A DNA stretch of 64,000 nt from positions 193,179 through 257,178 of the IMG/VR virus record IMGVR_UViG_3300011113_000805; one strand, 5' to 3'. Below are positions 11,297-52,732 of the stretch, piece after piece. The notes beneath the pieces are model-generated. The model saw only the letters and a program-made list of their open reading frames with translations. It searched no databases and was not told the DNA's origin. How positions within the stretch are numbered: position 1 is the first letter of the stretch; every line of letters starts with the position of its first letter. The position numbers were made by a program, and so were the translations under genes.

Positions 11297-11340
11297 CTCC
11301 GTATATGATCTGTTATTATGCCGGCAGTGCTTTGTACAGG
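11297..11340 (-). promoter_or_regulatory. Type B repeated promoter/RBS element
   Basis: Minus strand CCTGTACAAAG-N10-TAATAACAGATC...CGGAG. Other copies at about 12224, 12567, 13733, 14454, 16376 (partial), 16921, 17473, 18025, 18573, 19182, 22448, 23677, 24082, 24665, 25204, 30023, 30581, 31159, 31776, 32334, 33534, 52670. Confidence 0.75.
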
Positions 11341-11359
11341 TCACCGTTGCAAATAGTTG

Positions 11360-11653
11360 CTAATTTTTTGATGTGTCTCGTTCAATGAAAGTAACGTCTT
11401 CCTCAACGATGCATATCCACTGAGGAGTTCCGTTGATGAGAAGATGAGCGTAACGCCGCGACATCGTACGGATGTGGGCCATTCTGGTCCAGGCATTCCA
11501 GAAGATATCTCGGCCTCGGCCAGTATATGCGGCATCCAACAGAAGACAGATACGATCTGTCTCATTGTCCCAGCCTCGATCACGCCAATAAAGCATGCCC
11601 CTGAGCAGGATGAGCTCACCAATATGGTCGTTGAGGCGACTAATGAAAGTCAT
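11360..11653 (-). CDS. SH3-like paralog family H protein
   Basis: H.G.LI.L...LYW...RGWD.ETDRIC.LLD...LLI.G.P.W. Confidence 0.7.
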   Translation of the reverse strand: MTFISRLNDHIGELILLRGMLYWRDRGWDNETDRICLLLDAAYTGRGRDIFWNAWTRMAHIRTMSRRYAHLLINGTPQWICIVEEDVTFIERDTSKN

Positions 11654-11934
11654 TCAGCGTCTCCATCGATGAGTTCTATGTTATCAAGCTTCAAGCATAC
11701 CCACCGAGGGATTCCATCAATGAGAAGATGAGCGTAATAATTGTTGTCTCCACCCGGGGTACTCGCGTCAAAGTCGAAATCGTAACTCGTTTGATCCATA
11801 TGAAGAACATCCAGCAGCACACAGATACGATCTGTCTCATCGTCCCAGCCTCGACCTCCCCACCAGTAAAGCTCGGTATTGAGACGGATGAGGCCGCCGG
11901 CGTGGGCCTTGAACCGGTCAAACCTGTGGGTCAT
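11650..11934 (-). CDS. Paralog family H protein
   Basis: Same motifs; ATGA overlap. Confidence 0.7.
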   Translation of the reverse strand: MTHRFDRFKAHAGGLIRLNTELYWWGGRGWDDETDRICVLLDVLHMDQTSYDFDFDASTPGGDNNYYAHLLIDGIPRWVCLKLDNIELIDGDAE

Positions 11935-12218
11935 TCAGCACCTTCATGGAGGAGCTCGATGTCATCCATGTCATGAATCTGGATCCACCGCGGTGCGTCA
12001 TAGATGAAGATCTTTGCGTACGTAAAGGTACGACTGTTCCCGGCTGCGGTCACAGCCTCGACCAGGCCGGGCATGTTGGAGGTCTCCAACAGGAGACAGA
12101 TCGTATCTGTCTCATTGTCCCAGCCTCGACCTCCCCACCAGAAGATCTTGACGTTGAGGCGAATAAGACCACCGGCGTGCGCCTTCAGATCTGAAAGGCA
12201 GACCGTATTCCGTGCCAT
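11931..12218 (-). CDS. Paralog family H protein
   Basis: Same motifs; degenerate type B element upstream. Confidence 0.7.
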   Translation of the reverse strand: MARNTVCLSDLKAHAGGLIRLNVKIFWWGGRGWDNETDTICLLLETSNMPGLVEAVTAAGNSRTFTYAKIFIYDAPRWIQIHDMDDIELLHEGAE

Positions 12219-12269
12219 GAAATCTCCGTGATGTGATCTGTTATGGCGCGGCGACGTTAACGTACATGT

Positions 12270-12560
12270 TCAAGCCTTCTCCTTCCCCTCCACAGTCTTG
12301 CCAGTGACGGGATTGACATAGGACACGTTGAAGTACACCGTGTCCTCATGGGACCATTCGGCGCCAATGATCGTGGCCCGAATGTTGTGACGGCTCCGGA
12401 TTCCATTGATAGGGTCGATGAGGTTTCTTTCAATCATCATCGTCTTGCCCAGCAATGGGGCAATCTGCTTCCGAAGGATCTTGTTCCGGGCGTTCTCGAG
12501 GTCGACCAGCACCGCGTTGCTGAATTCGTCGATATCAGTATCAGTGATCAAACTGGACAT
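12270..12560 (-). CDS. Hypothetical protein
   Basis: Start MSSLITD after the type B GGAG. Confidence 0.65.
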   Translation of the reverse strand: MSSLITDTDIDEFSNAVLVDLENARNKILRKQIAPLLGKTMMIERNLIDPINGIRSRHNIRATIIGAEWSHEDTVYFNVSYVNPVTGKTVEGKEKA

Positions 12561-12654
12561 GTTTCTCTCCGTGATGTGATCTGTTATTATAGTGCCGGCA
12601 CTTTGTACAGGCACTTTGTGCAAAAAGTGCAAAATTTAGGTCACATCACGTGTC

Positions 12655-13725: not shown

Positions 13726-13819
13726 ATTCCTCTCCGTGATGTTATCTGTTATTATGGTGACGTCACTTTGTACAGGCACTTTGTGCAAAAAGCACAAATT
13801 TTTGATCACATCACAGTTA

Positions 13820-14447: not shown

Positions 14448-14547
14448 ATTCCTCTCCGTGATGAGATCTGTTATTACGGTGCCGGTCATTTGTACAGGCA
14501 CCGCGAGCAAATAGTCGAAAGTTTTTGTCTCACCACGGGACGAGGTA

Positions 14548-15894: not shown

Positions 15895-15986
15895 GTTGCT
15901 TTCCTCTCGGTGATGATATCTATTATTCACTTTTGAGCCCGGAGGACACCCCTCGGCACACCTTTTTTGCAACTATTTTTAGAGGA

Positions 15987-16310: not shown

Positions 16311-16421
16311 GTGATGTCTCCTGTGAAGTTGGTTAGATGCGAAAGTCGACCAGGCTTGGTCCTTCATGGAGGCGTCATTAGTATCGGCACTTTGTACAGG
16401 CGCCGAGAGAAAATAGCTGAA

Positions 16422-16913
16422 CTATTTTCCGGACTGGAGGTGTTCAACCAGCCACTTAGCTTGGACTTCGTACGAAGTAGCCTCGGCAGCCCGAGCAGCC
16501 CGAGCAGCAGCTCCAGCAGCACGAGCAGCCTCAGCAGCAGCCCAAGTAGCCCCAGCATCAGCAGCAGCAGCAGCCCAAGCAGCACGAGCAGCCCAAGCAG
16601 CAGCCCGAGCAACACGAGCAGCCCAAGCAGCAGCTTCCAGCTCCTCAGAAGTGATGCTCTTCTCATCCTCCAGCCACCGGTCCACCAAGGACAGGGCATG
16701 TGTCACACTCTGATCCGGCTCACGTCCTGATCGAGCCAGTGCCTCACCGGCACACCATCGGGAAAATGACACCAGGTCCCGATGGGTGATGATACCAATG
16801 TGCTCCCGGCCTTGCAGGAGGATGCAGTTGAGCTGGAGGTTTCGTGTCAGCTCTGCCTCAGACAGAGTCGTCTGCTCACCGGTGACGGGATCAACCAGGA
16901 CGTACTGGGTCAT
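16422..16913 (-). CDS. Ala-rich Imm5-like paralog
   Basis: GIITHRDLV.F.RWCA / VDRWLED / AAW-AAR tract / QA.WLVEHLQSGK. Confidence 0.8.
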   Translation of the reverse strand: MTQYVLVDPVTGEQTTLSEAELTRNLQLNCILLQGREHIGIITHRDLVSFSRWCAGEALARSGREPDQSVTHALSLVDRWLEDEKSITSEELEAAAWAARVARAAAWAARAAWAAAAADAGATWAAAEAARAAGAAARAARAAEATSYEVQAKWLVEHLQSGK

Positions 16914-16920
16914 GAGATAT

Positions 16921-16994
16921 CTCCGTGATGAGATCTGTTATTACGGTGCCGGCACTTTGTACAGGCACCGAGAGAAAATAGCTGAACTATTTTC
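16921..16994 (-). promoter_or_regulatory. Type B element with UP-region inverted repeat GAAAATAG-N5-CTATTTTC containing the upstream stop codon
   Basis: Representative full-length copy; palindromic spacer gtgccggcac. Confidence 0.75.
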
Positions 16995-17466
16995 CGGACT
17001 GGAGGTGCTCCACAAGCCACTTGGCTTGGGTTTCATATGAAGCAGCCTCAACAGCCCAAGCAGCCCGAGCAGCAGACCGAGCAGCCCAAGCAGCATCAGC
17101 AGCCCAAGTAGCATCAGCTGCAGCCCAAGCAGCCCAAGCAACATCAGCAGCATCAGCAGCAGCAGCCTCAGCAGCCCCAGCAGCAGCTTCCAGCTCCTCA
17201 GGAGTAACACTCTGCTGGTCCTCCAGCCATCGATCGACCATGGTCAGAGCATGGATCGACCTCTGATCAGGCTCATCCACCAGCAGCGTCAGCATCTCAC
17301 CGGCACACCACCGAGCAAATGCGACCAAGTCTCGGTGGGTGATGATGCCAATGTGCTCCCGGCCTTGCAGGAGCACGCAATTCTGTCTGAGGTTTCGTAT
17401 CAGTTCGACCTCAGGCAGAATCGACTGCTCACCGGTGACGGGATCGATCAAAGTGTACTGGTGCAT
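16987..17466 (-). CDS. Ala-rich Imm5-like paralog
   Basis: Family motifs; start MHQYTL. Confidence 0.8.
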   Translation of the reverse strand: MHQYTLIDPVTGEQSILPEVELIRNLRQNCVLLQGREHIGIITHRDLVAFARWCAGEMLTLLVDEPDQRSIHALTMVDRWLEDQQSVTPEELEAAAGAAEAAAADAADVAWAAWAAADATWAADAAWAARSAARAAWAVEAASYETQAKWLVEHLQSGK

Positions 17467-17538
17467 GTCGAGCTCCGTGATGAGATCTGTTATTATGGCT
17501 AAGCCACTTTGTACAGGTCCTGGGAGCAAATAGTTGAA

Positions 17539-18018
17539 CTATTTTCCGGACTGGAGGTGTTCAACCAGCCACTGAGTTTGAACTTCATATGAAGTAGCCC
17601 TGGCAGCAGTCTGAGCAGTCCGAGCAGCCCAAACAGCAGCCTCAGCAGCCCGATCAGCAGCCATGGTAGTAGTCCAAGAAGCAGCCTCAGCAGCCCGATC
17701 AGCAGCCATGGTAGCAGTCCGAGCATCATAAGCAGCAGCTACCAGCTCCTCAGAAGTGACGCTCTTCTCGTTCTCCAGCCACCGGTCCACCAAGGACAGG
17801 GCATGTGTCACCTTCAGGTCAGGCTCATCCACCAGCAGCGTCAACGTCTCACCGGCACACCATCGAGCAAAGGCGACCAGGTCCCGGTGGGTGATGATGC
17901 CCAGATGCTCATTCCCTCGAAGAAGGATGCAGCTGAGCTGGAGGTTTCGGGTGAGCTCAAGCTCCGACAGAGTCGTCTGCTCACCGGTGACGGGATCGAT
18001 CAAAGTGTACTGGTGCAT
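17539..18018 (-). CDS. Ala-rich Imm5-like paralog
   Basis: Family motifs; start MHQYTL. Confidence 0.8.
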   Translation of the reverse strand: MHQYTLIDPVTGEQTTLSELELTRNLQLSCILLRGNEHLGIITHRDLVAFARWCAGETLTLLVDEPDLKVTHALSLVDRWLENEKSVTSEELVAAAYDARTATMAADRAAEAASWTTTMAADRAAEAAVWAARTAQTAARATSYEVQTQWLVEHLQSGK

Positions 18019-18090
18019 GTCAAGCTCCGTGATGAGATCTGTTATTATGGCTGAGCCACTTTGTACAGGTCCTGGGAGCAAATAGTTGAA

Positions 18091-18567
18091 CTATTTTCCG
18101 GACTGGAGGTGCTCCACAAGCCACTGAGCTTGAGACTCGTACAAAAGCCCACGACTCCCAGCATCCCAAGCAGCCCCGGCAGCAGCCCAAGCAGCAGCCC
18201 CAGCAGTCCGAGCAGCCTCAGCAGCCTCAGCAGCAGCCCGAGCAGCCCGAGCAGCCTGAGCAGCCCGAGCAGCAGCCCCAGCAGCAGCTTCCAGCTCCTC
18301 AGGTGTAACACTCTGCTGATCCTCAAGCCACTGGTCCACCAAGGACAGGGCATGTGTCACCTTCAGGTCAGGCTCATCCACCAGCAGCGTCAGCGTCTCA
18401 CCGGCACACCATCGAGCAAAGGCGACCAGGTCCCGGTGGGTGATGATGCCCAGATGCTCATTCCCTCGAAGAAGGATGCAGCTGAGCTGGAGGTTTCGGG
18501 TGAGGTCGATCTCAGACAGAAAAGTTTGCTTACCGGTGACAGAATCAACCAAGGTGTACCGGGACAT
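18091..18567 (-). CDS. Ala-rich Imm5-like paralog
   Basis: Family motifs. Confidence 0.8.
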   Translation of the reverse strand: MSRYTLVDSVTGKQTFLSEIDLTRNLQLSCILLRGNEHLGIITHRDLVAFARWCAGETLTLLVDEPDLKVTHALSLVDQWLEDQQSVTPEELEAAAGAAARAAQAARAARAAAEAAEAARTAGAAAWAAAGAAWDAGSRGLLYESQAQWLVEHLQSGK

Positions 18568-18638
18568 GAGAACTCCGTGATGAGATCTGTTATTTCGGCT
18601 GAGTCGCTTTGTACAGGCGCCGACGGAAAATAGCTGAA

Positions 18639-19172
18639 CTATTTTCCGGACTGGAGGTGCTGCTCAAACCACTGAGCTTGGACTTCGTATGAAGTAGCTC
18701 CGGCAGCAGCTCCAGCAGCCCGAGCAGCCCAAACAGCAGCCTCAGCAGCCCGATCAGCAGCCATGGTAGCAGCCCAAGAAGCAGTCTGAGCAGCAGCATG
18801 AGCAGCCCAAGCAGCAGTCTGAGCAGCAATATGAGCAGCCCAAGAAGCCCGAGCAGCAGCCCAAGCAGCCTGAGCAGCTGCTTCAGCAGCGTCTTTCAGC
18901 TCCTCATTGCTGAGGCTCCTCTCATCCTCCAGCCACCGGTCCACCAAGGACAGGGCATGTGTCACCTTCAGGTCAGGCTCATCCACCAGCAGCTTCAGCA
19001 TCTCACCGGCACACCATCGAATGAAGATGACCAGGTCCCGGTGGGTGATGATGCCCAGATGCTCATTCCCTCGAAGAAGGAGGTAGCCAATCTGGAGGTT
19101 TCGGGTGAGCTTAAGCTCCGACAGAGTCCACTGCCGGCCGGTGGCAGGATCAATCAAAGTGTATTTAGGCAT
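18639..19172 (-). CDS. Ala-rich Imm5-like paralog
   Basis: Family motifs. Confidence 0.8.
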   Translation of the reverse strand: MPKYTLIDPATGRQWTLSELKLTRNLQIGYLLLRGNEHLGIITHRDLVIFIRWCAGEMLKLLVDEPDLKVTHALSLVDRWLEDERSLSNEELKDAAEAAAQAAWAAARASWAAHIAAQTAAWAAHAAAQTASWAATMAADRAAEAAVWAARAAGAAAGATSYEVQAQWFEQHLQSGK

Positions 19173-19260
19173 TTCCGAAGCTCCGTGATGAGATCTGTTA
19201 TTATGGCTGAGCCACTTTGTACAGGTCCCGGGAGCACTTTTCTAAAAATGTTTACTCCTT

Positions 19261-19628: not shown

Positions 19629-19713
19629 TGGTAGCCCCAGCCGGACTCGAACCGGCACGCTCAATGAACAAGAGATTTTGAGTCTCTCGCGTCTTCCGTT
19701 CCGCCATGGGGCC
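19629..19713 (-). tRNA. trnL: tRNA-Leu(CAA)
   Basis: Cloverleaf, long variable arm, CT-CAA-AA loop, GTTCGA, CCA. Confidence 0.92.
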
Positions 19714-19720
19714 AATGAAG

Positions 19721-19795
19721 TGGTGGGTCATCCGAGACTCGAACTCGGAACTAACGGATTAAGAGTCCGCTACTCTACCATTGAGTTAATGACCC
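19721..19795 (-). tRNA. trnK: tRNA-Lys(CTT)
   Basis: CT-CTT-AA loop, T arm, CCA. Confidence 0.95.
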
Positions 19796-19800
19796 GAAGA

Positions 19801-19876
19801 TGGTGGGTTGTCTGGGGCTTGAACCCAGGGCCTACGGATTAAAAGTCCGCTGCTCTACCGACTGAGCTAACAACCC
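19801..19876 (-). tRNA. trnK: tRNA-Lys(TTT)
   Basis: CT-TTT-AA loop, CCA. Confidence 0.95.
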
Positions 19877-19880
19877 ATAA

Positions 19881-21835: not shown

Positions 21836-21947
21836 GATGACGTCCTTTTCCTGAGGGTTTGTGGGGTTTCGGAACCATTCCGCCCCAACAAGATGAATAT
21901 AATCACTTTCGGTCAAGTTGAACAGGTACCGGAGCACCTTTTTGCAA

Positions 21948-22441: not shown

Positions 22442-22538
22442 ATTCCTCTCCGCGATGATATCTGTTATTATGGTCGGAGGGTTTTGTACAGGTCCGGGGA
22501 CACCTTTTTTGAAGGAATTTTCCCCGGACCTGCACCGG

Positions 22539-23288
22539 TCAGGACTCCTCGGAAGCCGCCACCTCGAAGCCGTGACGGCCCAGGCTCAGCCAGCTGGTCC
22601 GACCGGTACCGCCGAAGCGGTTCTTGGTCACCTCGAACTTGCGATGACCGATGAGGGTCTTGTCCTTCTTCTCCCAGCCGAGGTGGATGTGGCAGTCGAT
22701 CATGTGCTTCATCTTGTTGCTGCCGGCGAAGGTGCCGCCCTTCGTCACCTGGCCGATGGTGATGACGTTGGTGAAGTTCTCCTTCGCCCAGGTGGTGAGC
22801 TTCTCCAGGGAGCGCTCGGCGGTCCAGCAGGTGATCCGGCCGGTGTCGAACTTGCCATCATCCAGGCACTGGAGGGAGTCGACCATGAGGAAGAAGGGCT
22901 TGCCCTTGTTCTCGGGACGATTGCGGATGGCGTCCGCCGCCTCGATGAGCTTGTCGACGTGGGTCTCACCGCCGACGAGGAAGTTGGGGTCGATGCCGAG
23001 GCGGTCCACGGTGCGCTTCACCTGGAAGAGGCTCTCCTCCGCCGTGTTGAAGAGGACCACGCTGCCGTTCTCGGTGAGGCCGGAGGCCATCGTCAGGAGG
23101 GCCGTGGTCTTGCCGGCGCCGGGCTCGCCGGTGAACATCGTCACCATCGACGGGGTGAACCCCTCGCCACCGAGGCCCTCATCGATCCACTCGATGCCGG
23201 AGAGGTGACGCTTCAGGAGCTCCATCGGCACGCGAACGTCGTTGATGTTGGTACCAACCGCGAAGGTGTCGGAGAACGAGATACGCAT
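22539..23288 (-). CDS. radA: RadA/Sms-like RecA-fold ATPase (no Zn finger, no Lon-like domain)
   Basis: GEPGAGKT, AEES, VDSLQ, GQVTKGG.FAG, KNRFG signature. Confidence 0.8.
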   Translation of the reverse strand: MRISFSDTFAVGTNINDVRVPMELLKRHLSGIEWIDEGLGGEGFTPSMVTMFTGEPGAGKTTALLTMASGLTENGSVVLFNTAEESLFQVKRTVDRLGIDPNFLVGGETHVDKLIEAADAIRNRPENKGKPFFLMVDSLQCLDDGKFDTGRITCWTAERSLEKLTTWAKENFTNVITIGQVTKGGTFAGSNKMKHMIDCHIHLGWEKKDKTLIGHRKFEVTKNRFGGTGRTSWLSLGRHGFEVAASEES

Positions 23289-23434
23289 GTGTATGATGTC
23301 CTTTTCCTGAGGGTTTGTGGGGTTCCGGAACCATTCCGCCCCAACAAGATGAATATAATCACTTTCGGGTCAGTGGGACAGGTCTCCGGAGCACCTTTTT
23401 GCACATTTTTGTGCAGTGCTCCGGAGATAGCGTG

Positions 23435-23638: not shown

Positions 23639-23784
23639 GAGACGCTCCGGCGCAGGGAGGAACCATTCCGCCCCAACATGTACTGTTATTTCGGTGGGTG
23701 CACTTTGTACAGGTCTCCGGAGCACCTTTTTGCACATTTTTGTGCAATGCTCCGGAGATAGCATGTCACCGACGACGCCCTATG

Positions 23785-24045: not shown

Positions 24046-24140
24046 TGCTGACTCCGTATGTGAGAGGAAACCATCAACCAACATGATCTGTTATTATGGT
24101 GTCGGCACTTTGTACAGGCACCGTGAGCAAATAGTTGAAA

Positions 24141-24659
24141 CTATTTTCCGGACTGGAGATGCTCGACCCACCACTGGGCCTGGGCTTCATATGAAGTGTA
24201 ATCCCGAGAAACCTGAGAAGTAGCCATGGCTGCATTTGAAGCCCCGTCACCATACACAGCTGCACGCTGCGCGGCAGCCTGGGCAGTCCAAGTGGCAGTT
24301 CGGGCAGCAACAAAAGCAACCAGTGGCGCAGCATCAGTAATAGCAGGAGCAGCAGCCCAAGCAGCAGCACGAGCAGCCGCTTCCAGCTCCTCAGAAGTGA
24401 CGCTCTTCTCATCTTCAAGCCACCGGTCCACCAAGGACAATGCATGGGCCACCCTCTGATTAGGCTCGCCTTTCAATCGAGCCAGCGTCTCATTGGTGCA
24501 CCATCGAGCGAAGAGAACTAAGTCTCGGTGAGTGACGATACCGAGGTGCTCCTGGTCTCGGAAGAGAATACAGTTGAGCCTGATATTTTGGGTAAGCTCA
24601 AGCTCCGACAGCGTGTGCTGCTCGCCGGTGACAGGATCGATCAGGGTGTACCGGGCCAT
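24141..24659 (-). CDS. Ala-rich Imm5-like paralog
   Basis: Family motifs; start MARYTL. Confidence 0.8.
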   Translation of the reverse strand: MARYTLIDPVTGEQHTLSELELTQNIRLNCILFRDQEHLGIVTHRDLVLFARWCTNETLARLKGEPNQRVAHALSLVDRWLEDEKSVTSEELEAAARAAAWAAAPAITDAAPLVAFVAARTATWTAQAAAQRAAVYGDGASNAAMATSQVSRDYTSYEAQAQWWVEHLQSGK

Positions 24660-24733
24660 GAGAACTCCGTGATGAGATCTGTTATTATGGTGCCCGCACT
24701 TTGTACAGGCTCCGGAGCACCTTTTTGCAAAAA

Positions 24734-25198
24734 TTATTGAGCCGACCTCAGGTGCTCCACCAGCCATTGGGCTTGGGCTTCGAAGGAAACACCGGCAGAG
24801 TTATTAGCAGCCCATGCAGCAGACCCAGCAACATCAGCAGCGCCGGCAGCACTAGAAGCAGCCCAAGCAGCCCGCGCAGCAACAGCACCAGGGCAAGCAA
24901 CATCAGCAGCGGCAGCAGCCTGTTTCAGCTCCTCACTGGAGGCAGAACCCGGGTCGATCAGCCACTTGTCGACCAGGCCCAGCGCAGTATAGACTTCAGG
25001 GGGAACCGTGTGACACTGAGCAAGAGTCTTCTCAACACACCACCGACAGAAGGAGACAACATCGCGATGTGTGATGACGCCGATGTGTTCATCCCCACGA
25101 AGGAGGATATGATTGACCCGCATATGATGTGTCAGTTCCGACGCAGCTACCGTCGACGTGCCACCGGTGAATGGATTCAGGAGGGTATACCGGGTCAT
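24734..25198 (-). CDS. Ala-rich Imm5-like paralog
   Basis: Family motifs; start MTRYTL; TAA stop. Confidence 0.8.
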   Translation of the reverse strand: MTRYTLLNPFTGGTSTVAASELTHHMRVNHILLRGDEHIGVITHRDVVSFCRWCVEKTLAQCHTVPPEVYTALGLVDKWLIDPGSASSEELKQAAAAADVACPGAVAARAAWAASSAAGAADVAGSAAWAANNSAGVSFEAQAQWLVEHLRSAQ

Positions 25199-25316
25199 GA
25201 GGGCTCCGTGATGAGATCTGTTATTACGGTGCCGGCACTTTGCACAGGTCCCTGTGCAACTTTTTTGTGAAAATAGTTGCAGGCCTCCCGTGCGCGCGTA
25301 ATAGGAGATTGCCGTC

Positions 25317-29529: not shown

Positions 29530-30015
29530 TTATTGACCGGACTGGAGGTGTTCAACCAGCCACTGAGCTTGGGCTTCATATGAAACAGCCCAAGTAGCAC
29601 GAGCAGCCCAAGTAGCATGAACAGTAGCCCGAGCAACATCAGAAGCAGCCCAAGCAGCCCGAGCAGCAGCCCAAGCAGTAGCCCGAGCAGCAGCCCGAGC
29701 AGTAGCCCCAGCATCCCAAGCATCAAAAGCAGCAGCTACCAGCTCCTCAGAAGTGATGCTCTTCTCATTCTCCAGCCACCGGTCCACCAAGGACAGGGCA
29801 TGTGTCACAGTGTGATCCGGTTCACATTTCAGTCGAGCCAAAATCTTACCAGCGCACCACCGAGTGAAGATGACTAGGTCCCGGTGGGTGATGATTCCCA
29901 AATGCTCCCGGCCTTGAAGAAGAACGCAATTGAGCTGAAGGTTTTGGGTGAGCTCTGCCTCAAACAGAGTCGTCTGCCGGCCGGTGACCGGATCAATCAA
30001 TGTGTATTGGGCCAC
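29530..30015 (-). CDS. Ala-rich Imm5-like paralog
   Basis: Family motifs; GTG start. Confidence 0.8.
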   Translation of the reverse strand: MAQYTLIDPVTGRQTTLFEAELTQNLQLNCVLLQGREHLGIITHRDLVIFTRWCAGKILARLKCEPDHTVTHALSLVDRWLENEKSITSEELVAAAFDAWDAGATARAAARATAWAAARAAWAASDVARATVHATWAARATWAVSYEAQAQWLVEHLQSGQ

Positions 30016-30088
30016 GTCAAATCTCCGTGATGAGATCTGTTATTTCAGCACCGGCACTTTGTACAAGCGCCGAGAGAAAATAGCTGAA

Positions 30089-30574
30089 CTATTTTCCGGA
30101 CTGAAGGTGTTCAACCAGCCACTGAGCCTGAGACTTGTAAGAAAGCCCACGATCCTCAGCAGACCGAGCAACATCAGCAGCAACCCAAATAGCCCGAGCA
30201 GCCCGAGCAGCAGCCCAAGCAGCATCAGCAGCAGCCCAAATAGCCCGAGCAGCGTCAGCAGCATCAACAGCAGCCCAAGCAACCTCAGCGACGGCTTCCA
30301 GCTCCTCAGGAGTAACTCTCTTTTCATCCTCCAGCCACCGATCGACCAGGGTCAAGGCATACTGTGCCTCAGGAGTCGATGTGCCCTTCGCTCGAGCAAT
30401 TGCCTCCATGGCACACCACCGAGCAAAGGCGACCAAGTCTCGGTGGGTGATGATACCAATGTGCTCCCGGCCTTGCAGGAGGATGTAGTTAGGAGCGAGG
30501 TTTTGTGTCAGCTCGACCTCAGACAGAGTCGTCTGCTGGCCGGTAATAGGATCGATCAGTGTGTACAGGTGCAT
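30089..30574 (-). CDS. Ala-rich Imm5-like paralog
   Basis: Family motifs; start MHLYTL. Confidence 0.8.
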   Translation of the reverse strand: MHLYTLIDPITGQQTTLSEVELTQNLAPNYILLQGREHIGIITHRDLVAFARWCAMEAIARAKGTSTPEAQYALTLVDRWLEDEKRVTPEELEAVAEVAWAAVDAADAARAIWAAADAAWAAARAARAIWVAADVARSAEDRGLSYKSQAQWLVEHLQSGK

Positions 30575-30647
30575 GTCGAGCTCCGTAATGAGATCTGTTA
30601 TTACAGTGCCGGCACTTTGTACAGGCACCGCGAGCAAATAGTCGAAA

Positions 30648-31151
30648 CTATTTTTCGGACCGCAGATGCTCCACCAGCCACTGAGCTTGGACTTCGTACG
30701 AAGCAGTCTGAGTAGCCCGAGTAACCCAAGCAGTCCGAGCAGCAGCCCGAGTAGCCCAAGCAACAGCCTCAGCAGCAGCCCAAGCAGCCCCAGCAACAGC
30801 CTCAGTAGTAGCTCCAGCAGCCCAAGCAACAGCCTCAGCAGCCTGAGCAGCCCCAGCAGCCCGAGCAGCAGCTTCCAGCTCCTCAGGAGTAACACTCTGC
30901 TGGTCCTCCAGCCACCGGTCCACCAAGGACAGGGCATGTGTCACCTTCAGGTCAGGCTCATCCACCAGTCGAGCCAGCATCTTACCAGCGCACCACCGAG
31001 CAAAGGCGACCAAGTCTCGGCGGGTGATGATGCCAATGTGCTTCCTATCTTGAAGAAGAATGCAATTGAGCTGAAGGTTTCGTGTCAGCTCTGCCTCAGA
31101 CAGAGTCGTCTGCTGGCCGGTGGCAGGATCGATCAGTGTGTATTGGGCCAT
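30648..31151 (-). CDS. Ala-rich Imm5-like paralog
   Basis: Family motifs. Confidence 0.8.
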   Translation of the reverse strand: MAQYTLIDPATGQQTTLSEAELTRNLQLNCILLQDRKHIGIITRRDLVAFARWCAGKMLARLVDEPDLKVTHALSLVDRWLEDQQSVTPEELEAAARAAGAAQAAEAVAWAAGATTEAVAGAAWAAAEAVAWATRAAARTAWVTRATQTASYEVQAQWLVEHLRSEK

Positions 31152-31225
31152 GTCAAATCTCCGTGATGAGACCTGTTATTTCAGTACCGGCACTTTGTAC
31201 AGGTCCTGGGAGCAAATAGTCGAAA

Positions 31226-31768
31226 CTATTTTCCGGACTGGAGGTGTTCAACCAGCCAACATGCTTGGGCTTCATATGAAGCAATCTCAGTAGCCTCAGC
31301 AGCCCAAGCAGCCCGAGCAGCAGCCCAAGCAGCCTGAGCAGCAAACCGAGCAGCCTCAGCAGCAGCCCAAGCAGCCTCAACAGCCCAAGCAGCCCGAGCA
31401 GCAGCCCAAGCAGCCCCAGCAACAGCCTGAGCGGCAGTCCAAGCAGCAGCCTCAGCAGTCCGAGCAGCCCAAGCAGCATCAGCAGCAGCTTTCAGCTCCT
31501 CAGGAGTAACACTCTGCTGATCCTCCAGCCACTGGTCGACCATGGTCAGAGTATGTGTCACCTTCAGGTCAGGCTCATCCACCAGTCGAGCCAGCATCTT
31601 ACCAGCGCACCACCGAGCAAAGGCGACCAAGTCTCGATGGGTGATGATGCCAATGTGCTCCCCATCTCGAAGGAGGATGCAGCCAATCTGGAGGTTTCGG
31701 GTGAGCTCTACCTCAGACAGAGTCGTCTGCCGGCCGGTGGCAGGATCGATCAGTGTGTATTGGGCCAT
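31226..31768 (-). CDS. Ala-rich Imm5-like paralog
   Basis: Family motifs. Confidence 0.8.
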   Translation of the reverse strand: MAQYTLIDPATGRQTTLSEVELTRNLQIGCILLRDGEHIGIITHRDLVAFARWCAGKMLARLVDEPDLKVTHTLTMVDQWLEDQQSVTPEELKAAADAAWAARTAEAAAWTAAQAVAGAAWAAARAAWAVEAAWAAAEAARFAAQAAWAAARAAWAAEATEIASYEAQACWLVEHLQSGK

Positions 31769-31841
31769 GTCAAATCTCCGTGATGAGACCTGTTATTTCA
31801 GTACCGGCACTTTGTACAGGTCCCGGGAGCAAATAGCTGAA

Positions 31842-32327
31842 CTATTTTCCGGACTGGAGGTGCTCAACAAACGTTTGTGCTTGAGCTTCATAAGTGATGA
31901 TAGCATGATAATCAAGTGACCAGGCTATTTCAGCAATAATCTCCAAGGCCCAATTAGCATTGGCAATAACCCGCACCGGAGAAGCAATAATCCAATCCGG
32001 TGACCATATAGAAGTCTCACCATTGGTGATCACATATCCTGCAATGAAGTCAAGTTGTTCACAGGACAGGCTATTTGGATCCTCTAACCATTGATCGGCT
32101 AGCTGTATAGCATACAAAGAATCTGGTTCCGGTAGTTCGATCATCCGATTCTTTATCACATCTGCACACCGTCGAGCGAAGACGACCAAGTCTCTATATG
32201 TAACGACACCAATATGGTTATTCCCTTGAAGAAGAATGCAATTAAGCATAAGATTTTGCAATAGCTCGGTTTTAGGTACAGTTTTGCTAAAGCCTGTGAA
32301 AGGATTGATTAGAGTGTAATGGATCAT
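31842..32327 (-). CDS. Divergent Imm5-like paralog (non-repetitive middle)
   Basis: Family N- and C-termini; Ala tract replaced by AT-rich sequence. Confidence 0.75.
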   Translation of the reverse strand: MIHYTLINPFTGFSKTVPKTELLQNLMLNCILLQGNNHIGVVTYRDLVVFARRCADVIKNRMIELPEPDSLYAIQLADQWLEDPNSLSCEQLDFIAGYVITNGETSIWSPDWIIASPVRVIANANWALEIIAEIAWSLDYHAIITYEAQAQTFVEHLQSGK

Positions 32328-32399
32328 AGGAATTCCATGATGAGATCTGTTATTACAGTGCCGGCACTTTGTACAGGCACCGCGAGCAAATAGTCGAAA

Positions 32400-32525
32400 C
32401 TATTTTTCGGACCGCAGATGCTCCACCAGCCACTGAGCTTGAGACTTGTTGTGCTCCTCATCTCGAAGGAGGATGCAATCCTGCCTGAGGTTTCGTGTCA
32501 GCTCGACCTTGGACAGGTCGCCCAC
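32400..32525 (-). pseudogene. In-frame deletion remnant of an Imm5-like paralog
   Basis: LSKVELTRNLRQDCILLRDEEH fused to KSQAQWLVEHLRSEK*. Confidence 0.7.
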
Positions 32526-32533
32526 CGGCCGGG

Positions 32534-32959
32534 TCAGGCCACCCTCTTCGATCCGCCCTTCTTGGGGGCAACCGGGCCGCGGAAGACCAGGGTGTTGACC
32601 ACTCCCAAGTACCCGATCGGCTCCCCCTCAGCAGCCTTCTGCATCGCCTCGGAGGCTACCTCGTCGAGGCCTTCGGACCCTGGCACGGAGAATGCCACGT
32701 CCACGTCAGAGTCGTCACGGAACCTGTTCCTCTCAAGAACGGAGCCGATGATCCACACGGACACCTCCTCCGCTGGGAGGTCGAGGACCTCCGCGGCCAG
32801 TTCCTTGAGGGAGGGTGCGGCGCCGGCCACGGCGCGGATGGCATCCTTTCTGTACGCGTCGAGGTCGGGGTCTTGGGAGGCAAGGACCTCGTTGAGGGAA
32901 TGTGTCACTTCTTCACGGATGATAGACTTGAGCTTGGATAACTTTATCTTCATGGGCAA
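32534..32959 (-). CDS. Leader-bearing minimal nucleotidyltransferase (Pol-beta/MNT fold)
   Basis: IIGSVL...DSDVDV; leader LSKLKSIIREEV...LNE. Confidence 0.75.
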   Translation of the reverse strand: MPMKIKLSKLKSIIREEVTHSLNEVLASQDPDLDAYRKDAIRAVAGAAPSLKELAAEVLDLPAEEVSVWIIGSVLERNRFRDDSDVDVAFSVPGSEGLDEVASEAMQKAAEGEPIGYLGVVNTLVFRGPVAPKKGGSKRVA

Positions 32960-33042
32960 TAAGTATGTCTGCCGCCGAGAAACCCATTAAAGAATAAAAG
33001 CGGGTCAAGTCGTGCGGGCTGTTTGGAGCAACTTTTGTATCT

Positions 33043-33525
33043 TTATTGACCAGACTTCAGGTGTTCCACAAACCACTGTGCCTGAGACTTGTAAGAAAGC
33101 CCACGATCCTCAGCAGACCGAGCAACATCAGCAGCAGCCTCAGCAGCGTCAGCAGCATCAACAGCAGCCCAAATAGCCTCAGCAGCAGCCCAAGCAGCCC
33201 GAGCAGCAGCCTCAGCACCAGCCCGAGCAGCAGCCTTAGCAGCGTCTTTCAACTCCTCAGAAGTGATGCTTAGCTCATCATCCAGCCACTGGTCGACCAT
33301 GGTCAGAGCATGCGTCACCTTCAGGTCAGGCTCATCCACCAGTCGAGCCAGCATCTTACCAGCGCACCACCTAGCAAAGGCGACCAAGTCTCGGTGGGTG
33401 ATGATGCCAATGTGCTCCCCATCTCGAAGAAGGATGCAGTTGAGCTGGAGGTTTCGTGTCAGCTCGACCTCAGACAGAGTCGTCTGCCAGCCGGTGGCAG
33501 GATCAATCAAAACATAGTCAGGCAT
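33043..33525 (-). CDS. Ala-rich Imm5-like paralog
   Basis: Family motifs. Confidence 0.8.
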   Translation of the reverse strand: MPDYVLIDPATGWQTTLSEVELTRNLQLNCILLRDGEHIGIITHRDLVAFARWCAGKMLARLVDEPDLKVTHALTMVDQWLDDELSITSEELKDAAKAAARAGAEAAARAAWAAAEAIWAAVDAADAAEAAADVARSAEDRGLSYKSQAQWFVEHLKSGQ

Positions 33526-33600
33526 GTCCAGGACTCCGTGATGAGATCTGTTATTTCGGCTGAGTCGCTTTGTACAGGCACCGCGAGCAAATAGTCGAAA

Positions 33601-34092
33601 CTATTTTTCGGACCGCAGATGCTCCACCAGCCAACGTGCTTGGGCTTCATATGAAGCAATCTCAGCAGCAATCTCGACAGCAGCCCAAGTAGCATGAGCA
33701 GCGGCCTGAGCAGCCGTGGTAGCAGCCCAAGCAGCCCGAGCAGCAGCCCAAGCAGTAGCCCGAGCAGCAGCCCGAGCAGCAGCCCCAGCATCCCAAGCAT
33801 CAAAAGCAGCAGCTTCCAGCTCCTCATTGCTGACGCTCTGTTGGTCCTCCAACCACCGGTCGACCAGGATCAAGGCATACTGCGTCTCAGGAGCAGGTGT
33901 GCCCTTCACTCGAGCCAGTGTCTCAACTGCTAGCCATCGAACAAAGACAACCAGATCCCTATGGGTAACAATGCCAATATGCTCATTCTCTCGAGCAAGA
34001 ATGTCATTGCTGGCTATTTTTCGTGTTAGATCATGCTCTTGTACAATTTTGTTCATTCCCGTAATGGGATTAATTAGTGTATACTCTGTCAT
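33601..34092 (-). CDS. Ala-rich Imm5-like paralog
   Basis: Family motifs. Confidence 0.8.
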   Translation of the reverse strand: MTEYTLINPITGMNKIVQEHDLTRKIASNDILARENEHIGIVTHRDLVVFVRWLAVETLARVKGTPAPETQYALILVDRWLEDQQSVSNEELEAAAFDAWDAGAAARAAARATAWAAARAAWAATTAAQAAAHATWAAVEIAAEIASYEAQARWLVEHLRSEK

Positions 34093-34158
34093 GGCATTTT
34101 CCTTAAAGGATTATACCAATCAAGGTCTCACATTTACAAATTTGAACACCTAACGCTT

Positions 34159-49555: not shown

Positions 49556-50265
49556 GTGATTTTTACACCTCTAACTGTGATGGGAAGCACCAATGACCAA
49601 TTGCCGCTAGCGGCTAGTTGCAGCATTGCATCAGGCCTATAGACCGTCTTTCGAACCAAGCTATTTTTGCTTCTTAAAAGCCAGTCTTTGCGAGCCCTAA
49701 GATAAGCAGTCACCCAGGCTTTTTCATCACCTCCATTTCTTGGGGAAGCTTCTGGAAACGCTGCTCGATGTGTTGCTACCCTACCAGGACCACTGTGAAT
49801 GCAGGTATCGTAGATCGCTAAAACACCTAGCGCAGTCGATATACCAGCGCTCGCTGCATGATTAAGAGCCGGCTGGAAGTAGTCCTCATCAAAGACTTCA
49901 TCCTGGGCACGCCACATAATGGGATCAGGCCCTGCTTCACGAAGAAGCCTGATCAACTGTATCACTTCATCTCCCCAAGGACCCTTAGGTGGGACACGCG
50001 TTGAGGTATTCGAGCCAAGAGCAGGAAGAAAAGCTGCCAGTTCATTTGAAAGTTTTCCACCCAATCGGATGTAAGTTCGAACCACTCTATCTAAAGATCC
50101 AGATCGATCTGTAGACTGATGCTTTCCATATGAGATACCGGCTCCATCTGCAAGTATTGTGCAAGTCGAATACGAGCTAGGGCTCGGGATTCTGCCTGTT
50201 TCGAAAATAGAAAGAACGGAGTCAATAACACGCTTTTGTTCTGTGGTAAGCACTGGTAATGTCAT
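49552..50265 (-). CDS. Chitosanase (GH46)/lysozyme-fold hydrolase, putative endolysin
   Basis: SIFETG, DGAGISYG.HQ.T, YDTCIHSG. Confidence 0.65.
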   Translation of the reverse strand: MTLPVLTTEQKRVIDSVLSIFETGRIPSPSSYSTCTILADGAGISYGKHQSTDRSGSLDRVVRTYIRLGGKLSNELAAFLPALGSNTSTRVPPKGPWGDEVIQLIRLLREAGPDPIMWRAQDEVFDEDYFQPALNHAASAGISTALGVLAIYDTCIHSGPGRVATHRAAFPEASPRNGGDEKAWVTAYLRARKDWLLRSKNSLVRKTVYRPDAMLQLAASGNWSLVLPITVRGVKIT

Positions 50266-50927
50266 GCAGTCATTCCTGCAGCTTCTGCAAGAGCTATTAC
50301 GTGATCTTCACGAACTTTAAACACAACCTGATGATTGACACGTTCAACCCATCCTACATTAAAAAATCTGGGAATTCCGTTCTCTTTTGTGATCCAATGC
50401 TCATTTGAAAGTTTCTGATCGGGAACACAATTTTCTATTGCGGTCCATCGATCGCTATCCGACCACCCAATTTCATCACCATATTCATCAAATTCTGTGT
50501 TGTGTTCCTCATATGCCTTCCAGCTGAAGTCTGGGCCGTAAGGATTGCGAGGGGAGTTTGGGCACCACCACCCAATTGGCTTGAATAATTTCGCATCCTT
50601 TGCGGCATAAACATAATGTCTCGAATACACATCTTCTTCATTTAACCCTTTAAGGCAACCTTGAATTGTTGGGGCGACAGACATTCTGGGAGTTGTTTCA
50701 TCCTCAATCACATTTCCATGCATGTCCTCGTATGGAGAACTTGGCACTTGTAGTCGTGGCATAAATGAATCACCAAGCCATTTAGTGGTTAGGTGAAATG
50801 CATTAAACCTCTTCTCAAATTTTGCAATCTTCCTAGGTTGACGCATGCGTCTCTTTGTGTACAGAGGAATTTCAGTCTCTTCAAGATTGAGGGTTTCAAC
50901 TAATGACAATATTCTTGAATTTCTCAT
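50262..50927 (-). CDS. Hypothetical protein, possible ART-like fold
   Basis: FHLT...ED.TTPR..VAPTI.GCL...VPD....EHW. Confidence 0.4.
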   Translation of the reverse strand: MRNSRILSLVETLNLEETEIPLYTKRRMRQPRKIAKFEKRFNAFHLTTKWLGDSFMPRLQVPSSPYEDMHGNVIEDETTPRMSVAPTIQGCLKGLNEEDVYSRHYVYAAKDAKLFKPIGWWCPNSPRNPYGPDFSWKAYEEHNTEFDEYGDEIGWSDSDRWTAIENCVPDQKLSNEHWITKENGIPRFFNVGWVERVNHQVVFKVREDHVIALAEAAGMTA

Positions 50928-51733
50928 GTATCCCCCGTCCATTTATGAACAAGTTGCTTCCATTCATTCTGCGCCATTGTTTGCATTGTGCTGTTGAAAA
51001 CTGGTAATCCTGTTTTTTCAATTAATTCGATTATGTGCAGAGGGTCATGTCTATGCAAGCTTGTATCGCGTCTATTCCAATCTTCAATAATAATTCCTAT
51101 AGGACTCCAGTTATCTACAATGAGTTCATTCGATCCATGCATGTTTTCATCGAACGTTTCCTTGCCAAGGATATAGTAATCGGCTGTCTCATCAAATCCT
51201 CCTGCAGGATCAGATAAAAAAATGTTTGGTCGTTTTGGCAAGCCAGATGAAGCATACTTTGCAAAGTTTAAAGGCTTGACATGCTTATGATACCCAGAAA
51301 CAACTGCGTCCATATCATTGGCGGCCAGCGTTGTTCTTCCTTGAATGACAATTCCAATGGGACCCCACCCACTCATGCGGGTAAGAATCTTTTTTCCAGG
51401 AAGATAAGCCATAGTTGACACCTCGTTCTTCCTGCTCATGGAGAGAAATCTTCCTATATCAGCAGGCTTAACCCAGTGAACTTTAACAAGGGACTTCATA
51501 AATTCATGGTCAGCCTCAGCATTCCAAGCTCTCTTCACATCTTTGGCACCCTTTTTCAACCAAGAGGGACTTGTATCAAAAAAAGGATCATTTATCCAAT
51601 AATCAGGTTCTGATTCCTGATCTATGAATGAGCTTGCATAGACTCTATTATAATTGATGTTACTAGTTCTAGATTTGAAGCCCTGACGATCTTCAGCTAA
51701 GAACTCACGTATAAGTGTAAGCACAGTCTTCAT
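50924..51733 (-). CDS. Leader-bearing hypothetical protein
   Basis: MKTVLTLIREFLAE. Confidence 0.6.
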   Translation of the reverse strand: MKTVLTLIREFLAEDRQGFKSRTSNINYNRVYASSFIDQESEPDYWINDPFFDTSPSWLKKGAKDVKRAWNAEADHEFMKSLVKVHWVKPADIGRFLSMSRKNEVSTMAYLPGKKILTRMSGWGPIGIVIQGRTTLAANDMDAVVSGYHKHVKPLNFAKYASSGLPKRPNIFLSDPAGGFDETADYYILGKETFDENMHGSNELIVDNWSPIGIIIEDWNRRDTSLHRHDPLHIIELIEKTGLPVFNSTMQTMAQNEWKQLVHKWTGDT

Positions 51734-51776
51734 TCTTGGCAGCACCTTGCTATGTACTACATAGGCATTACATGTG

Positions 51777-52367
51777 TCAGTCTTCATCAAGCAAGGTGTA
51801 TGTAAATGACTTGAAGCCGTTCACGGCAACTTGTCGCTTGCAAAGCTTCATGAACTCTTCGAAGTCCTTGTCCATTGCCCAAACCTGACATCCTGCGCTC
51901 CATTTATCGACATTTGTAGAGTTACGACCGGCACGATGCAAATTGATGCCGTAAAGACCCTCTGTAATAGTTTTAGGATCTAGATTAAGGACATCATCCT
52001 TGTTGTTGTCACGATAAGTCTTTACTGGCTTTACCTGCCTAAGGGCTTCCTTTCCGCTATGAAGACCAATTTCCCAGCCACCACGATACTGACCAGGAAC
52101 CAACGCAGCGCACCCTTTGGAGTTCATGGTTGTCTTCATCCAATAAAGACCTGGGTCGGTAGTCGCTACCCAGCTCCAGAGCCTCATTGCACCGGTATCA
52201 TCCTTGCATGCAACAAAGATGCGATCATCGAACTTGTTAACGGTGCCAGTTTTCCTTCGAACACCAACAATATTCAGGTCCCAACTCTTTGTTTCAAAGG
52301 TGACATAACCCTTTGACTTTACCCAATCAAGTAGCTGTTGTGGTGTTTTTATGTCTTCAATTTTCAT
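51777..52367 (-). CDS. L,D-transpeptidase-like cell-wall enzyme
   Basis: GINLHRAG...WSAGCQV (His/Cys dyad motif). Confidence 0.6.
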   Translation of the reverse strand: MKIEDIKTPQQLLDWVKSKGYVTFETKSWDLNIVGVRRKTGTVNKFDDRIFVACKDDTGAMRLWSWVATTDPGLYWMKTTMNSKGCAALVPGQYRGGWEIGLHSGKEALRQVKPVKTYRDNNKDDVLNLDPKTITEGLYGINLHRAGRNSTNVDKWSAGCQVWAMDKDFEEFMKLCKRQVAVNGFKSFTYTLLDED

Positions 52368-52385
52368 CTTTATGAATCCTTAGTG

Positions 52386-52658
52386 CTATGTATCACTTTC
52401 GTAAGGAAATGGCATCAAATATTTCTCTGAAGCCCACGTGAAAGTATGATCTTCAATGCCGTACACAAGGTATTCGTTGGCAAGTTGATACTTTTCAATA
52501 AAGATAGAATTGTTATCCCTTGCACTGCAAATGTGTGATCCACCACAATGATCAAGCCTGACATTCAAAATCATAACTACTGGCGGATTACGAACAAGGT
52601 CAGAGATTGAATATCGACAAGAAAACACTGCCAGATCACCTTTAGAGAACCTGGACAC
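52386..52658 (-). CDS. Hypothetical protein
   Basis: FSKGDL; degenerate type B element upstream. Confidence 0.55.
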   Translation of the reverse strand: MSRFSKGDLAVFSCRYSISDLVRNPPVVMILNVRLDHCGGSHICSARDNNSIFIEKYQLANEYLVYGIEDHTFTWASEKYLMPFPYESDT

Positions 52659-52732
52659 TGCGTCCTCCCTATGATATGATCTGTTACTATAGCACTAGCA
52701 TTTAGTACAGGACAAAGATAAACTTTTGCTAA

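What the first reader, a model, noticed from the sequence alone, without database searches (positions are those of the whole stretch)
11297..52711. About 23 copies of one promoter/RBS element turn early genes into shufflable cassettes
Seen: AAAATAG..CTATTT..CCTGTACAAAG-N10-TAATAACAGATCTCATCACGGAG-N6-8-ATG precedes the Ala-rich paralogs and also unrelated genes (12560, 13725, 14447, 22441, 23638, 24045, 52658). Known: repeated early-promoter elements (PeSLs) mediate modular shuffling in T4-type phages. Inference: the element is both a promoter and a recombination handle, giving an integron-like array. No recombinase is visible except the RadA-like gene.
Basis: partly seen in the sequence, partly recalled or inferred. 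Interest (0 to 1): 0.8.

Follow-up and report, generated by a model that had tools for sequence, protein, structure and literature searches.

The report
Repeated promoter-like element bounding phage gene cassettes
An uncultured 257-kb freshwater phage carries about two dozen copies of one short upstream control element, and close relatives gain, lose and swap small genes exactly at these copies. It works like the PeSL regulatory cassettes of T4-type phages, not like an integron.

Summary
All copies are on the minus strand: 22 carry CCTGTACAAAG, and 20 of these have (T/A)AATAACAG exactly 11 nt further on. There are two more partial copies; chance predicts fewer than one. Thirteen copies precede Ala-rich paralogs and one a divergent paralog.

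Related genomes (a 252.7-kb scaffold, contig L015, several shorter contigs) have a collinear backbone with 90-100% identical proteins. They differ in cassette number and identity at intervals holding the element (9 of 10, against 6 of 24 without; p = 0.0015). The copy before g22441 is a chimera of the two copies that flank an extra cassette in both relatives. Independent assemblies and contigs of other runs support each arrangement.

Crossover points vary and no integrase was found, so this is homologous recombination on a short conserved patch, as with PeSLs.

Promoter function is likely but unproven. The core is bipartite with fixed spacing, sits behind a stem-loop and an A-rich tract, and stays intact where neighbouring proteins are only 40% identical. 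In relatives a second core with a good -10 replaces it. It fails a sigma-70 consensus scan, and no transcription start data exist.

The parts
29530..34141 (-). Array 1. The first paralog (34092-33601) sits behind a canonical TTGTAA-N18-TATAAT promoter and has no element. Six element copies follow (box A 5' ends 33578, 32377, 31820, 31203, 30625, 30067), each before an Ala-rich paralog.
   Evidence: the canonical promoter is conserved in the related scaffold
24141..25248 (-). Array 2. Element copies at 25248 and 24709 precede the paralogs that start at 25198 and 24659.
   Evidence: contigs of runs X5 and X14 skip 24101 to 25263, so both cassettes are absent in a relative
24046..24118 (-). Type-1 core joined to the second, longer leader type, before the unrelated gene g24045 (86 aa).
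23639..23713 (-). Type-1 core with the long leader before g23638 (67 aa). In two relatives the same gene and leader sit behind a T2 core instead.
22442..22492 (-). Copy before g22441. It is a chimera: its left half equals the copy after the RecA-like gene in the relatives, and its right half equals the copy after their extra paralog.
   Evidence: an X3 contig is identical to the window over 22373-22693
22493..22537 (-). Stem-loop directly upstream of box A and downstream of the RecA-like gene. Its 10-bp stem is kept through two compensatory changes between the window and L015.
   Evidence: (z = -6.2)
16422..19225 (-). Array 3. Five element copies (19225, 18617, 18069, 17517, 16965) each precede a paralog. 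L015 has none here and the related scaffold has two.
16311..16400 (-). Box A only, then an unrelated leader before g16310 (107 aa).
   Evidence: in L015 a full copy stands before the ortholog
15895..15928 (-). Degenerate box B before the DUF2201 metallopeptidase/VWA gene.
14448..14498 (-). Copy before g14447 (85 aa). Both relatives have at least two paralog cassettes at this point.
13726..13776 (-). Copy before g13725 (66 aa). This cassette is absent from the related scaffold.
12561..12611 (-). Copy before g12560 (96 aa). It is present at the same place in the related scaffold.
12219..12246 (-). Box B only before g12218 (95 aa). It shares the ATCACATC variant with the 12611 copy.
   Evidence: L017 has a full copy before its g12218 relative
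11292..11340 (-). Copy before g11291 (171 aa), a divergent paralog without the Ala-rich half.
52659..52711 (-). Diverged outlying copy before a GTG-started 90-aa gene.
   Evidence: (family D10)
23352..23382 (-). T2 core (CCTGTCC, 13 nt, GTGATTATATT) before the RecA-like gene. This is the second promoter-like class, and it can stand in place of the type-1 core.
21896..21926 (-). T2 core before the MoxR AAA+ ATPase gene, with the same 60-nt leader as the copy at 23352.
22539..23288 (-). It is 100% identical in the related scaffold. It is a candidate general recombination protein, not a site-specific recombinase.

Best explanation
The element is a composite upstream regulatory cassette. In transcription order it holds:
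- a stem-loop, usually with an A-rich loop or tract;
- a bipartite promoter-like core, CCTGTACAAAG, 11 nt, (T/A)AATAACAG;
- a short conserved leader ending in a GGAG ribosome-binding site, 5-8 nt before the start codon.

Each small gene behind a copy is thus a self-contained expression unit. Because the 45-70 nt patch is nearly identical at about two dozen places in a 23-kb region, the phage's general homologous recombination machinery can cross over or gene-convert between copies, within one genome or between co-infecting relatives. The results are deletion, duplication, insertion, relocation and promoter swapping of whole cassettes without damage to neighbouring genes. The main cargo is a hypervariable family of about 15 Ala-rich, possibly Imm5-like proteins.

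Shown: the repeat, its anatomy, its restriction to this region, and cassette differences between relatives with junctions inside the element.
Inferred: promoter activity, the polymerase or factor that reads it, any terminator role of the stem-loop, and the recombination enzymes.
For: Real and non-random.

Anatomy:
- In 56 distinct copies from several genomes, both boxes are near 2 bits per position, the spacer varies in sequence but not in length, and an A-rich tract lies upstream.
- Most copies have an upstream stem-loop. The one after the RecA-like gene keeps its stem through two compensatory changes.

Restriction to this region: all 16 exact bipartite matches in the 257-kb contig lie in the window.

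Selection on the element:
- Core identity is 87% against 71% for the adjacent coding sequence.
- The core is intact in L019, where neighbouring proteins are about 40% identical.

Promoter equivalence: g23638 has the type-1 core in the window, but a T2 core with a TATATT -10 in two relatives, at the same distance from the same leader.

Shuffling:
- 35 backbone orthologs are collinear. Nine of 10 intervals with the element differ in content, against 6 of 24 without (Fisher p = 0.0015).
- Paralog counts at three of the hot spots (window, related scaffold, L015) are 0/1/1, 5/2/0 and 0/2/at least 2.
- The junction at 22492 is chimeric. At 14498 the upstream flank matches the relative's first copy and the start region its last, but box A and the spacer match neither.
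- All combinations of left-flank type and first base of box B occur (copies 16965, 33578, 17517, 31203).

Independent support:
- Four assemblies from different samples give the same scaffold arrangement.
- Contigs of runs X5 and X14 carry joints at element copies that match the relatives' arrangements.
- Contigs of X2 and X3 are identical to the window across two junctions.
Against: Promoter function:
- The core does not meet a sigma-70 consensus; only the 11340 copy is picked up.
- No start-site data exist. The RNA runs are kept as contigs only and cover the region evenly, so they may hold DNA.
- The stem-loops have no U-tail, so terminator function is doubtful.

Shuffling statistics:
- Thirteen of 22 copies could owe their spread to tandem amplification of one gene family. 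That makes the interval statistic partly circular.
- Six content differences between the genomes lie where no element exists, so the element is not the only route to change.
- Metagenome assemblies can be chimeric at repeats; L024 may be an example.
Confidence: 0.65

Rival explanations
1. The element is not a promoter. The arrays are transcribed from upstream promoters such as the canonical one before the first paralog. The element is then the conserved intergenic unit of a tandemly amplified gene family: a stem-loop for RNA processing, stability or attenuation, plus a ribosome-binding site. Copies before unrelated genes are scars left where arrays were deleted. Recombination at the element is a passive consequence of the repetition.
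For: - Thirteen of 22 copies follow and precede paralogs, and the common hairpin contains the paralog stop codon.
- The first paralog has a canonical promoter and no element.
- g22441, g14447 and g16310 lie directly behind paralogs in at least one relative.
- The core fails the sigma-70 scan.
Against: - Two conserved boxes at a fixed distance with a free spacer are typical of a polymerase or factor site, not of an RNA structure. Pairing around box A shows little covariation: 96 of 2000 permutations reach the observed value.
- The core is joined to two unrelated leaders, so conservation ends where a transcript would begin.
- A core with a good -10 replaces it at the same distance from a shared leader.
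- g12560 keeps its copy in both genomes with no paralog nearby.
Confidence: 0.2
2. The element is the site of a dedicated site-specific recombinase, integron-like or otherwise, which is encoded outside the window or is of an unknown type. This enzyme excises and inserts cassettes as circles.
For: - There are many cassettes of one size class, each bounded by the same short motif.
- The spacer is often palindromic.
- Most ORFs in the region have no known family.
Against: - No integrase, transposase or serine recombinase domain was found in any window ORF tested.
- Crossover intervals differ between events: within TAATAACAG, in the spacer, and in or after box B.
- The spacer palindrome is no more frequent than in shuffled spacers: 595 of 2000 shuffles reach the observed value.
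- Paralogs are themselves mosaic and only 55-70% identical between genomes, as expected from general recombination.
Confidence: 0.05
3. The apparent shuffling is an artefact of metagenome assembly across a short repeat.
For: - All relatives are metagenome contigs.
- One contig of the 252.7-kb scaffold ends inside an array.
- L024 joins two distant blocks through paralogs.
Against: - The same arrangement was recovered from four samples. The overlaps between loci are identical or differ at 2 of 4106 positions.
- The L015-type and scaffold-type joints reappear in contigs of unrelated runs, and window-type junctions are identical in X2 and X3.
- The exact repeat is shorter than typical assembly words (own knowledge).
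Confidence: 0.05

Closest known systems
PeSLs (promoter-early stem-loops) of T4-type phages (PMC2839356, PMC4122927)
   Same: - Short composite intergenic motif: stem-loop, AT-rich tract, bipartite promoter, ribosome-binding site.
- Many copies concentrated in a hyperplastic region of small ORFan genes.
- Insertions, deletions and replacements between close relatives end in the motif.
- Crossovers lie between the promoter boxes and the start codon.
- No dedicated recombinase is known.
   Different: - The core is not a sigma-70 consensus promoter.
- The stem-loops have no U-tail, and their terminator activity is untested.
- More than half of the copies serve one amplified, hypervariable gene family.
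- A second promoter-like core (T2) can take the place of the first.
- Mini-circles are untested.
- Whether the phage is T4-like is unknown; none of the window's genes I tested places it among T4-like phages.
Integron cassette arrays (attC sites, IntI integrase)
   Same: A tandem array of small single-gene cassettes, each bounded by a repeated short site, with copy number and order varying between relatives.
   Different: - No integrase was found.
- The site is 5' of the gene and carries promoter-like and ribosome-binding signals, whereas integron cassettes are mostly promoterless.
- It is not an attC-type imperfect inverted repeat.
- Crossover points vary.
Phage promoter classes that need a phage factor: T4 MotA-dependent middle promoters (own knowledge), and early promoters of RNAP-encoding jumbo phages (PMC7598289)
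   Same: - A conserved box replaces a canonical -35.
- A roughly 10-nt AT-rich conserved block lies near -10.
- The motif is specific to one phage lineage and is repeated before many small genes.
   Different: The sequences differ, no factor or phage polymerase gene was seen in the window, and the match to the AR9 late motif AACA-N6 fails at the start position. This is a lead only.

Membership tests
PeSL | Repeated composite intergenic motif concentrated in a variable (hyperplastic) region | tested here: met
   There are 22 copies plus 2 partial copies between 11.3 and 33.6 kb, and one at 52.7 kb. All 16 exact matches in the 257-kb contig lie in the window.
PeSL | Contains a sigma-70 consensus early promoter (-35 and -10) | tested here: not met
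   The consensus scan finds only the 11340 copy. The best hexamers are CTGTAC and TAATAA or TAACAG.
PeSL | AT-rich tract upstream of the promoter | tested here: met
   An A-rich block 20-30 nt upstream of box A is conserved in 56 distinct copies.
PeSL | Adjacent stem-loop that terminates transcription | tested here: inconclusive
   Stem-loops are present in most copies (z between -2 and -6), and one shows compensatory changes. There is no U-tail, and terminator activity cannot be tested here.
PeSL | Indels and replacements between close relatives end in the motif | tested here: met
   Chimeric junction at 22492; at 14498 the flanks correspond but box A and the spacer match neither relative copy. 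Nine of 10 element-bearing intervals differ. Joints lie at copies in contigs of other runs.
PeSL | Mini-circles formed by recombination between flanking copies | not testable with these tools
   This needs outward PCR or raw long reads. The 'goes back' joints are explained by the relatives' gene order.
Integron | IntI-type tyrosine recombinase next to the array | tested here: not met
   No recombinase domain was found in the window ORFs scanned with Pfam or PHROGs. The rest of the genome was not seen.
Integron | attC site: imperfect inverted repeat at the 3' end of each cassette, with crossover at one fixed position | tested here: not met
   The conserved boxes are not inverted repeats of each other, pairing around box A shows little covariation, and crossover intervals differ between events.
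Integron | Promoterless cassettes read from a common promoter | tested here: inconclusive
   Every cassette has its own promoter-like core and GGAG, but transcription was not measured.
Imm5-like proteins (PF21805), for the Ala-rich paralogs | Significant match to the family profile or fold | tested here: inconclusive
   Pfam gives no hit even at E = 10. The atlas neighbours carry PF21805. The best BFVD match is an Imm-5-like protein at E = 0.06, TM 0.41, with a model of pLDDT 83.

The most novel reading that the evidence does not exclude
The type-1 core would be a new promoter class, read only with a phage-encoded factor or polymerase. Together with the RecA-like protein encoded among the cassettes, it would form a dedicated system. 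That system would co-express and continually reshuffle a hypervariable pool of Imm5-like proteins, acting as a diversity generator for host takeover or counter-defence rather than arising as a passive by-product of repetition.
Probability: 0.12. Interest if true: 0.8.

Novelty: new variant of a known kind. Interest (0 to 1): 0.55.

Why it matters
PeSL-mediated modular shuffling has been documented only in T4-type phages with sigma-70 early promoters. Here the same logic appears in an uncultured freshwater jumbo phage lineage with a different, unassigned promoter type. Natural variants show crossovers inside the element and even exchange of one promoter core for another.

This suggests that conserved promoter and leader patches are a general route by which large phages turn over accessory genes. 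It also gives a simple sequence handle for finding hyperplastic regions and their cargo in metagenomes. The cargo, a fast-changing array of about 15 Ala-rich, possibly Imm5-like proteins, is a candidate arms-race gene family worth testing.

Tried and rejected
- Sigma-70 consensus scan: the element is not picked up.
- Rfam: only the nine tRNAs.
- Hairpin enclosing box A and palindromic spacer: the consensus can pair, but covariation is weak and palindromes are no more common than in shuffled spacers. I do not claim these structures.
- AR9-type late promoter AACA-N6-T(A/G): the AACA is present but the start dinucleotide does not fit.
- T7-like 23-nt promoter: rejected, because the core is shared with a second, unrelated leader, so conservation ends near CAGATC.
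- Deposited phage genomes: no nucleotide match to the region or to the element. Protein matches are only distant, for example Microcystis phage Mel-JY01 and two huge uncultured phages at about 30%.
- Bacterial and archaeal genomes: no exact match to the 22-mer of box B, so there is no host clue.
- PDB sequence and fold searches with the paralog model: nothing significant.
- L006 from IMG/VR carries the exact bipartite core, but its proteins are unrelated. I treat it as a possible chance match.
- RNA runs X5 and X14 could not show transcription or start sites, because only contigs are kept.
- An automatic collinear chain of nucleotide matches missed the RecA-like gene. I used gene-level orthologs instead.
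Full report
**Observation**

The window is part of IMG/VR contig 3300011113_000805 (257,178 bp). The repeat is real and lies entirely on the minus strand.
- The 23-mer of box B has 18 matches at up to 3 mismatches, against 0 expected.
- The 11-mer of box A has 23 matches at up to 1 mismatch, against 0.78 expected. Two of these (28665 on the plus strand, and 55517) have no second box.
- Aligning the copies gives 19 full copies, 2 with the same core but a second leader type (23713, 24118), 1 with box A only (16400), and 2 partial copies with box B only (12246, and a degenerate one at 15924).
- All 16 exact matches to the bipartite core in the whole 257-kb contig fall inside the window, so the element marks one region.

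**Anatomy, in the direction of transcription**

The profile comes from 56 distinct copies in several genomes.
- First comes a stem-loop. Behind a paralog it is the AAAATAG/CTATTTT hairpin that contains the paralog's stop codon. Elsewhere it is a different, often GC-rich stem with an A-rich loop.
- Box A (CCTGTACAAAG) follows at nearly 2 bits per position.
- An 11-nt spacer follows, free in sequence but fixed in length.
- Then comes (T/A)AATAACAGATC, again at nearly 2 bits per position.
- A leader follows, usually TCATCACGGAG, and the start codon lies 5-8 nt after GGAG.
- The hairpin after the RecA-like gene keeps its 10-bp stem through two compensatory changes between the window and L015, with a G-U intermediate in the third genome.
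- A second stem that could enclose box A, and the palindromic look of the spacer, do not stand up to permutation.

**What follows the copies**

- Thirteen copies precede Ala-rich paralogs of 154-180 aa. One precedes g11291, a divergent paralog.
- The others precede small genes that match neither the paralogs nor each other: g12560, g13725, g14447, g22441, g52658, g24045, g23638, g16310 and g12218.
- The degenerate copy at 15924 precedes the much larger DUF2201 gene (448 aa).
- The first paralog of the largest array has no element. It has a canonical TTGTAA-N18-TATAAT promoter, conserved in the related genome.

**Relatives**

- Exact searches with box B found 11 metagenome contigs.
- A homology search with one paralog led to a 252,691-bp scaffold and other contigs. 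I joined three overlapping loci of that genome; the overlaps were identical or differed at 2 of 4106 positions.
- Between the window and this genome, 35 backbone orthologs are collinear, and most are 85-100% identical. The RecA-like protein is 100% identical, MoxR 96% and DUF2201 97%.
- Cassette content differs in 9 of the 10 intervals that hold the element, and in 6 of the 24 that do not (Fisher p = 0.0015).
- That statistic is partly circular, because paralogs carry the element. The junction sequences therefore matter more.

**Junctions**

- Both relatives have an extra paralog between the RecA-like gene and g22441. The single window copy at 22492 has the left half of their first copy and the right half of their second. 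Against L015, the crossover lies within TAATAACAG.
- After the DUF2201 gene, the upstream flank of the 14498 copy equals that of the relative's first copy, and its start region resembles the relative's last copy. Two paralogs lie between those copies in the relative. Box A and the spacer of the window copy match neither, so this is not a simple recombinant of the two.
- The five paralogs at 19172-16422 are absent from L015, and only two stand there in the other genome.
- g23638 has a type-1 core in the window but a T2 core in both relatives, joined at the same leader.
- Within the window, all four combinations of left-flank type and first base of box B occur.

**Independent support for the arrangements**

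- Four samples give the same arrangement of the related genome.
- Contigs of two metatranscriptome runs carry joints at 24101/25263, 23388/24125, 24651/22460, 24660/23784 and 25229/23701. All lie at element copies, and several match the relatives' gene order.
- Contigs of two other runs are identical to the window across the junctions at 22373-22693 and 24095-24621.

**Is it a promoter?**

For:
- It has bipartite conservation at a fixed distance and sits directly before ribosome-binding sites.
- An A-rich tract lies upstream of it.
- Conservation ends near CAGATC, where two different leaders are joined.
- The T2 class (CCTGTYC, 13 nt, GTGATTATATT; 8 copies) has a good TATATT -10 and replaces the type-1 core at the same geometry.
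- The core is intact in L019, where neighbouring proteins are about 40% identical.
- Its identity is higher than that of the adjacent coding sequence, 87% against 71%.

Against:
- It fails a sigma-70 consensus scan.
- No polymerase or sigma gene was seen in the window.
- The RNA data cannot show start sites.

I put promoter function at about 0.65 and leave the polymerase open. 'Early' is unverified.

**Recombination mechanism**

Crossover intervals differ between events. No integrase or transposase domain was found. The paralogs themselves are only 55-70% identical between genomes, apart from one pair at 95%. This fits general homologous recombination and gene conversion on short patches, as proposed for PeSLs (PMC2839356), and not integron-type site-specific exchange.

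**Cargo**

The paralog model (pLDDT 83) has a small N-terminal beta/alpha domain and a helical Ala-rich half. Atlas neighbours and the best viral fold match point to Imm5-like proteins, but Pfam gives no hit. This is a lead only.

**Verdict**

The recombination-handle idea is supported by natural variants. Promoter function is likely but untested. The integron analogy is rejected in favour of a PeSL-like cassette with a non-canonical promoter core.

Noticed in passing
window 23289-23351 and 21836-21895 (-): Nearly identical 60-nt leaders follow the T2 cores before the RecA-like and MoxR genes. Their hairpin (core GGAA-TGG-TTCC) has different but complementary outer arms in the window, the related scaffold and L015. 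This may be a cis-regulatory RNA.
   Followed up: partly
window 32400-32959 (-): A GC-rich ORF with a weak nucleotidyltransferase match sits inside a truncated paralog. It replaces that paralog's 5' half and its element.
   Followed up: partly
window 10000-34000: The cassette region is a GC-rich island (0.52-0.60) in a genome of about 0.40-0.45 GC. The first paralog (34092-33601) has the AT-rich composition of the flanks.
   Followed up: no
window 19629-20700 (-): A cluster of nine tRNA genes (Leu, Lys x2, Ser, Glu, Gln, Thr, Asn, Arg) lies between two cassette arrays, behind a T2 core.
   Followed up: partly
window 11360-12218 (-) and 42250-42350: Three tandem small genes with a 275-nt period overlap at their start and stop codons. 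They have a more distant relative near 42.3 kb, and their copy number differs between relatives without involving the element.
   Followed up: partly
window 34100-34141, 56975-57009, 6720-6755 (-): A third upstream motif class, ATTTGTAAAT followed by TATAAT, occurs three times (18-nt hexamer spacer in two copies, 9 nt in the third). This is the canonical-looking promoter type of this phage.
   Followed up: partly
window 26000-26240, 28400-28450, 10130-10165 (-): GGGGGCCC-type short repeats lie in intergenic regions.
   Followed up: no
L006:2882-2912 (IMGVR_UViG_3300037400_002378): An unrelated AT-rich viral contig carries the exact bipartite core directly before a ribosome-binding site and ATG. 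About one chance match is expected for 19 fixed bases (my rough estimate), so this is either chance or a shared promoter type.
   Followed up: partly
L024 (whole locus): This contig joins the w25682 block to the w14143 block through three paralogs. It would be a 12-kb deletion that removes the RecA-like, MoxR, tRNA and DUF2201 genes, or it is an assembly chimera.
   Followed up: no
window 49552-56961 (-): A group of DNA repair and RNA repair genes lies here: UvdE, a pyrimidine-dimer glycosylase and an RNA ligase. A GH46 chitosanase-like gene is also present.
   Followed up: no
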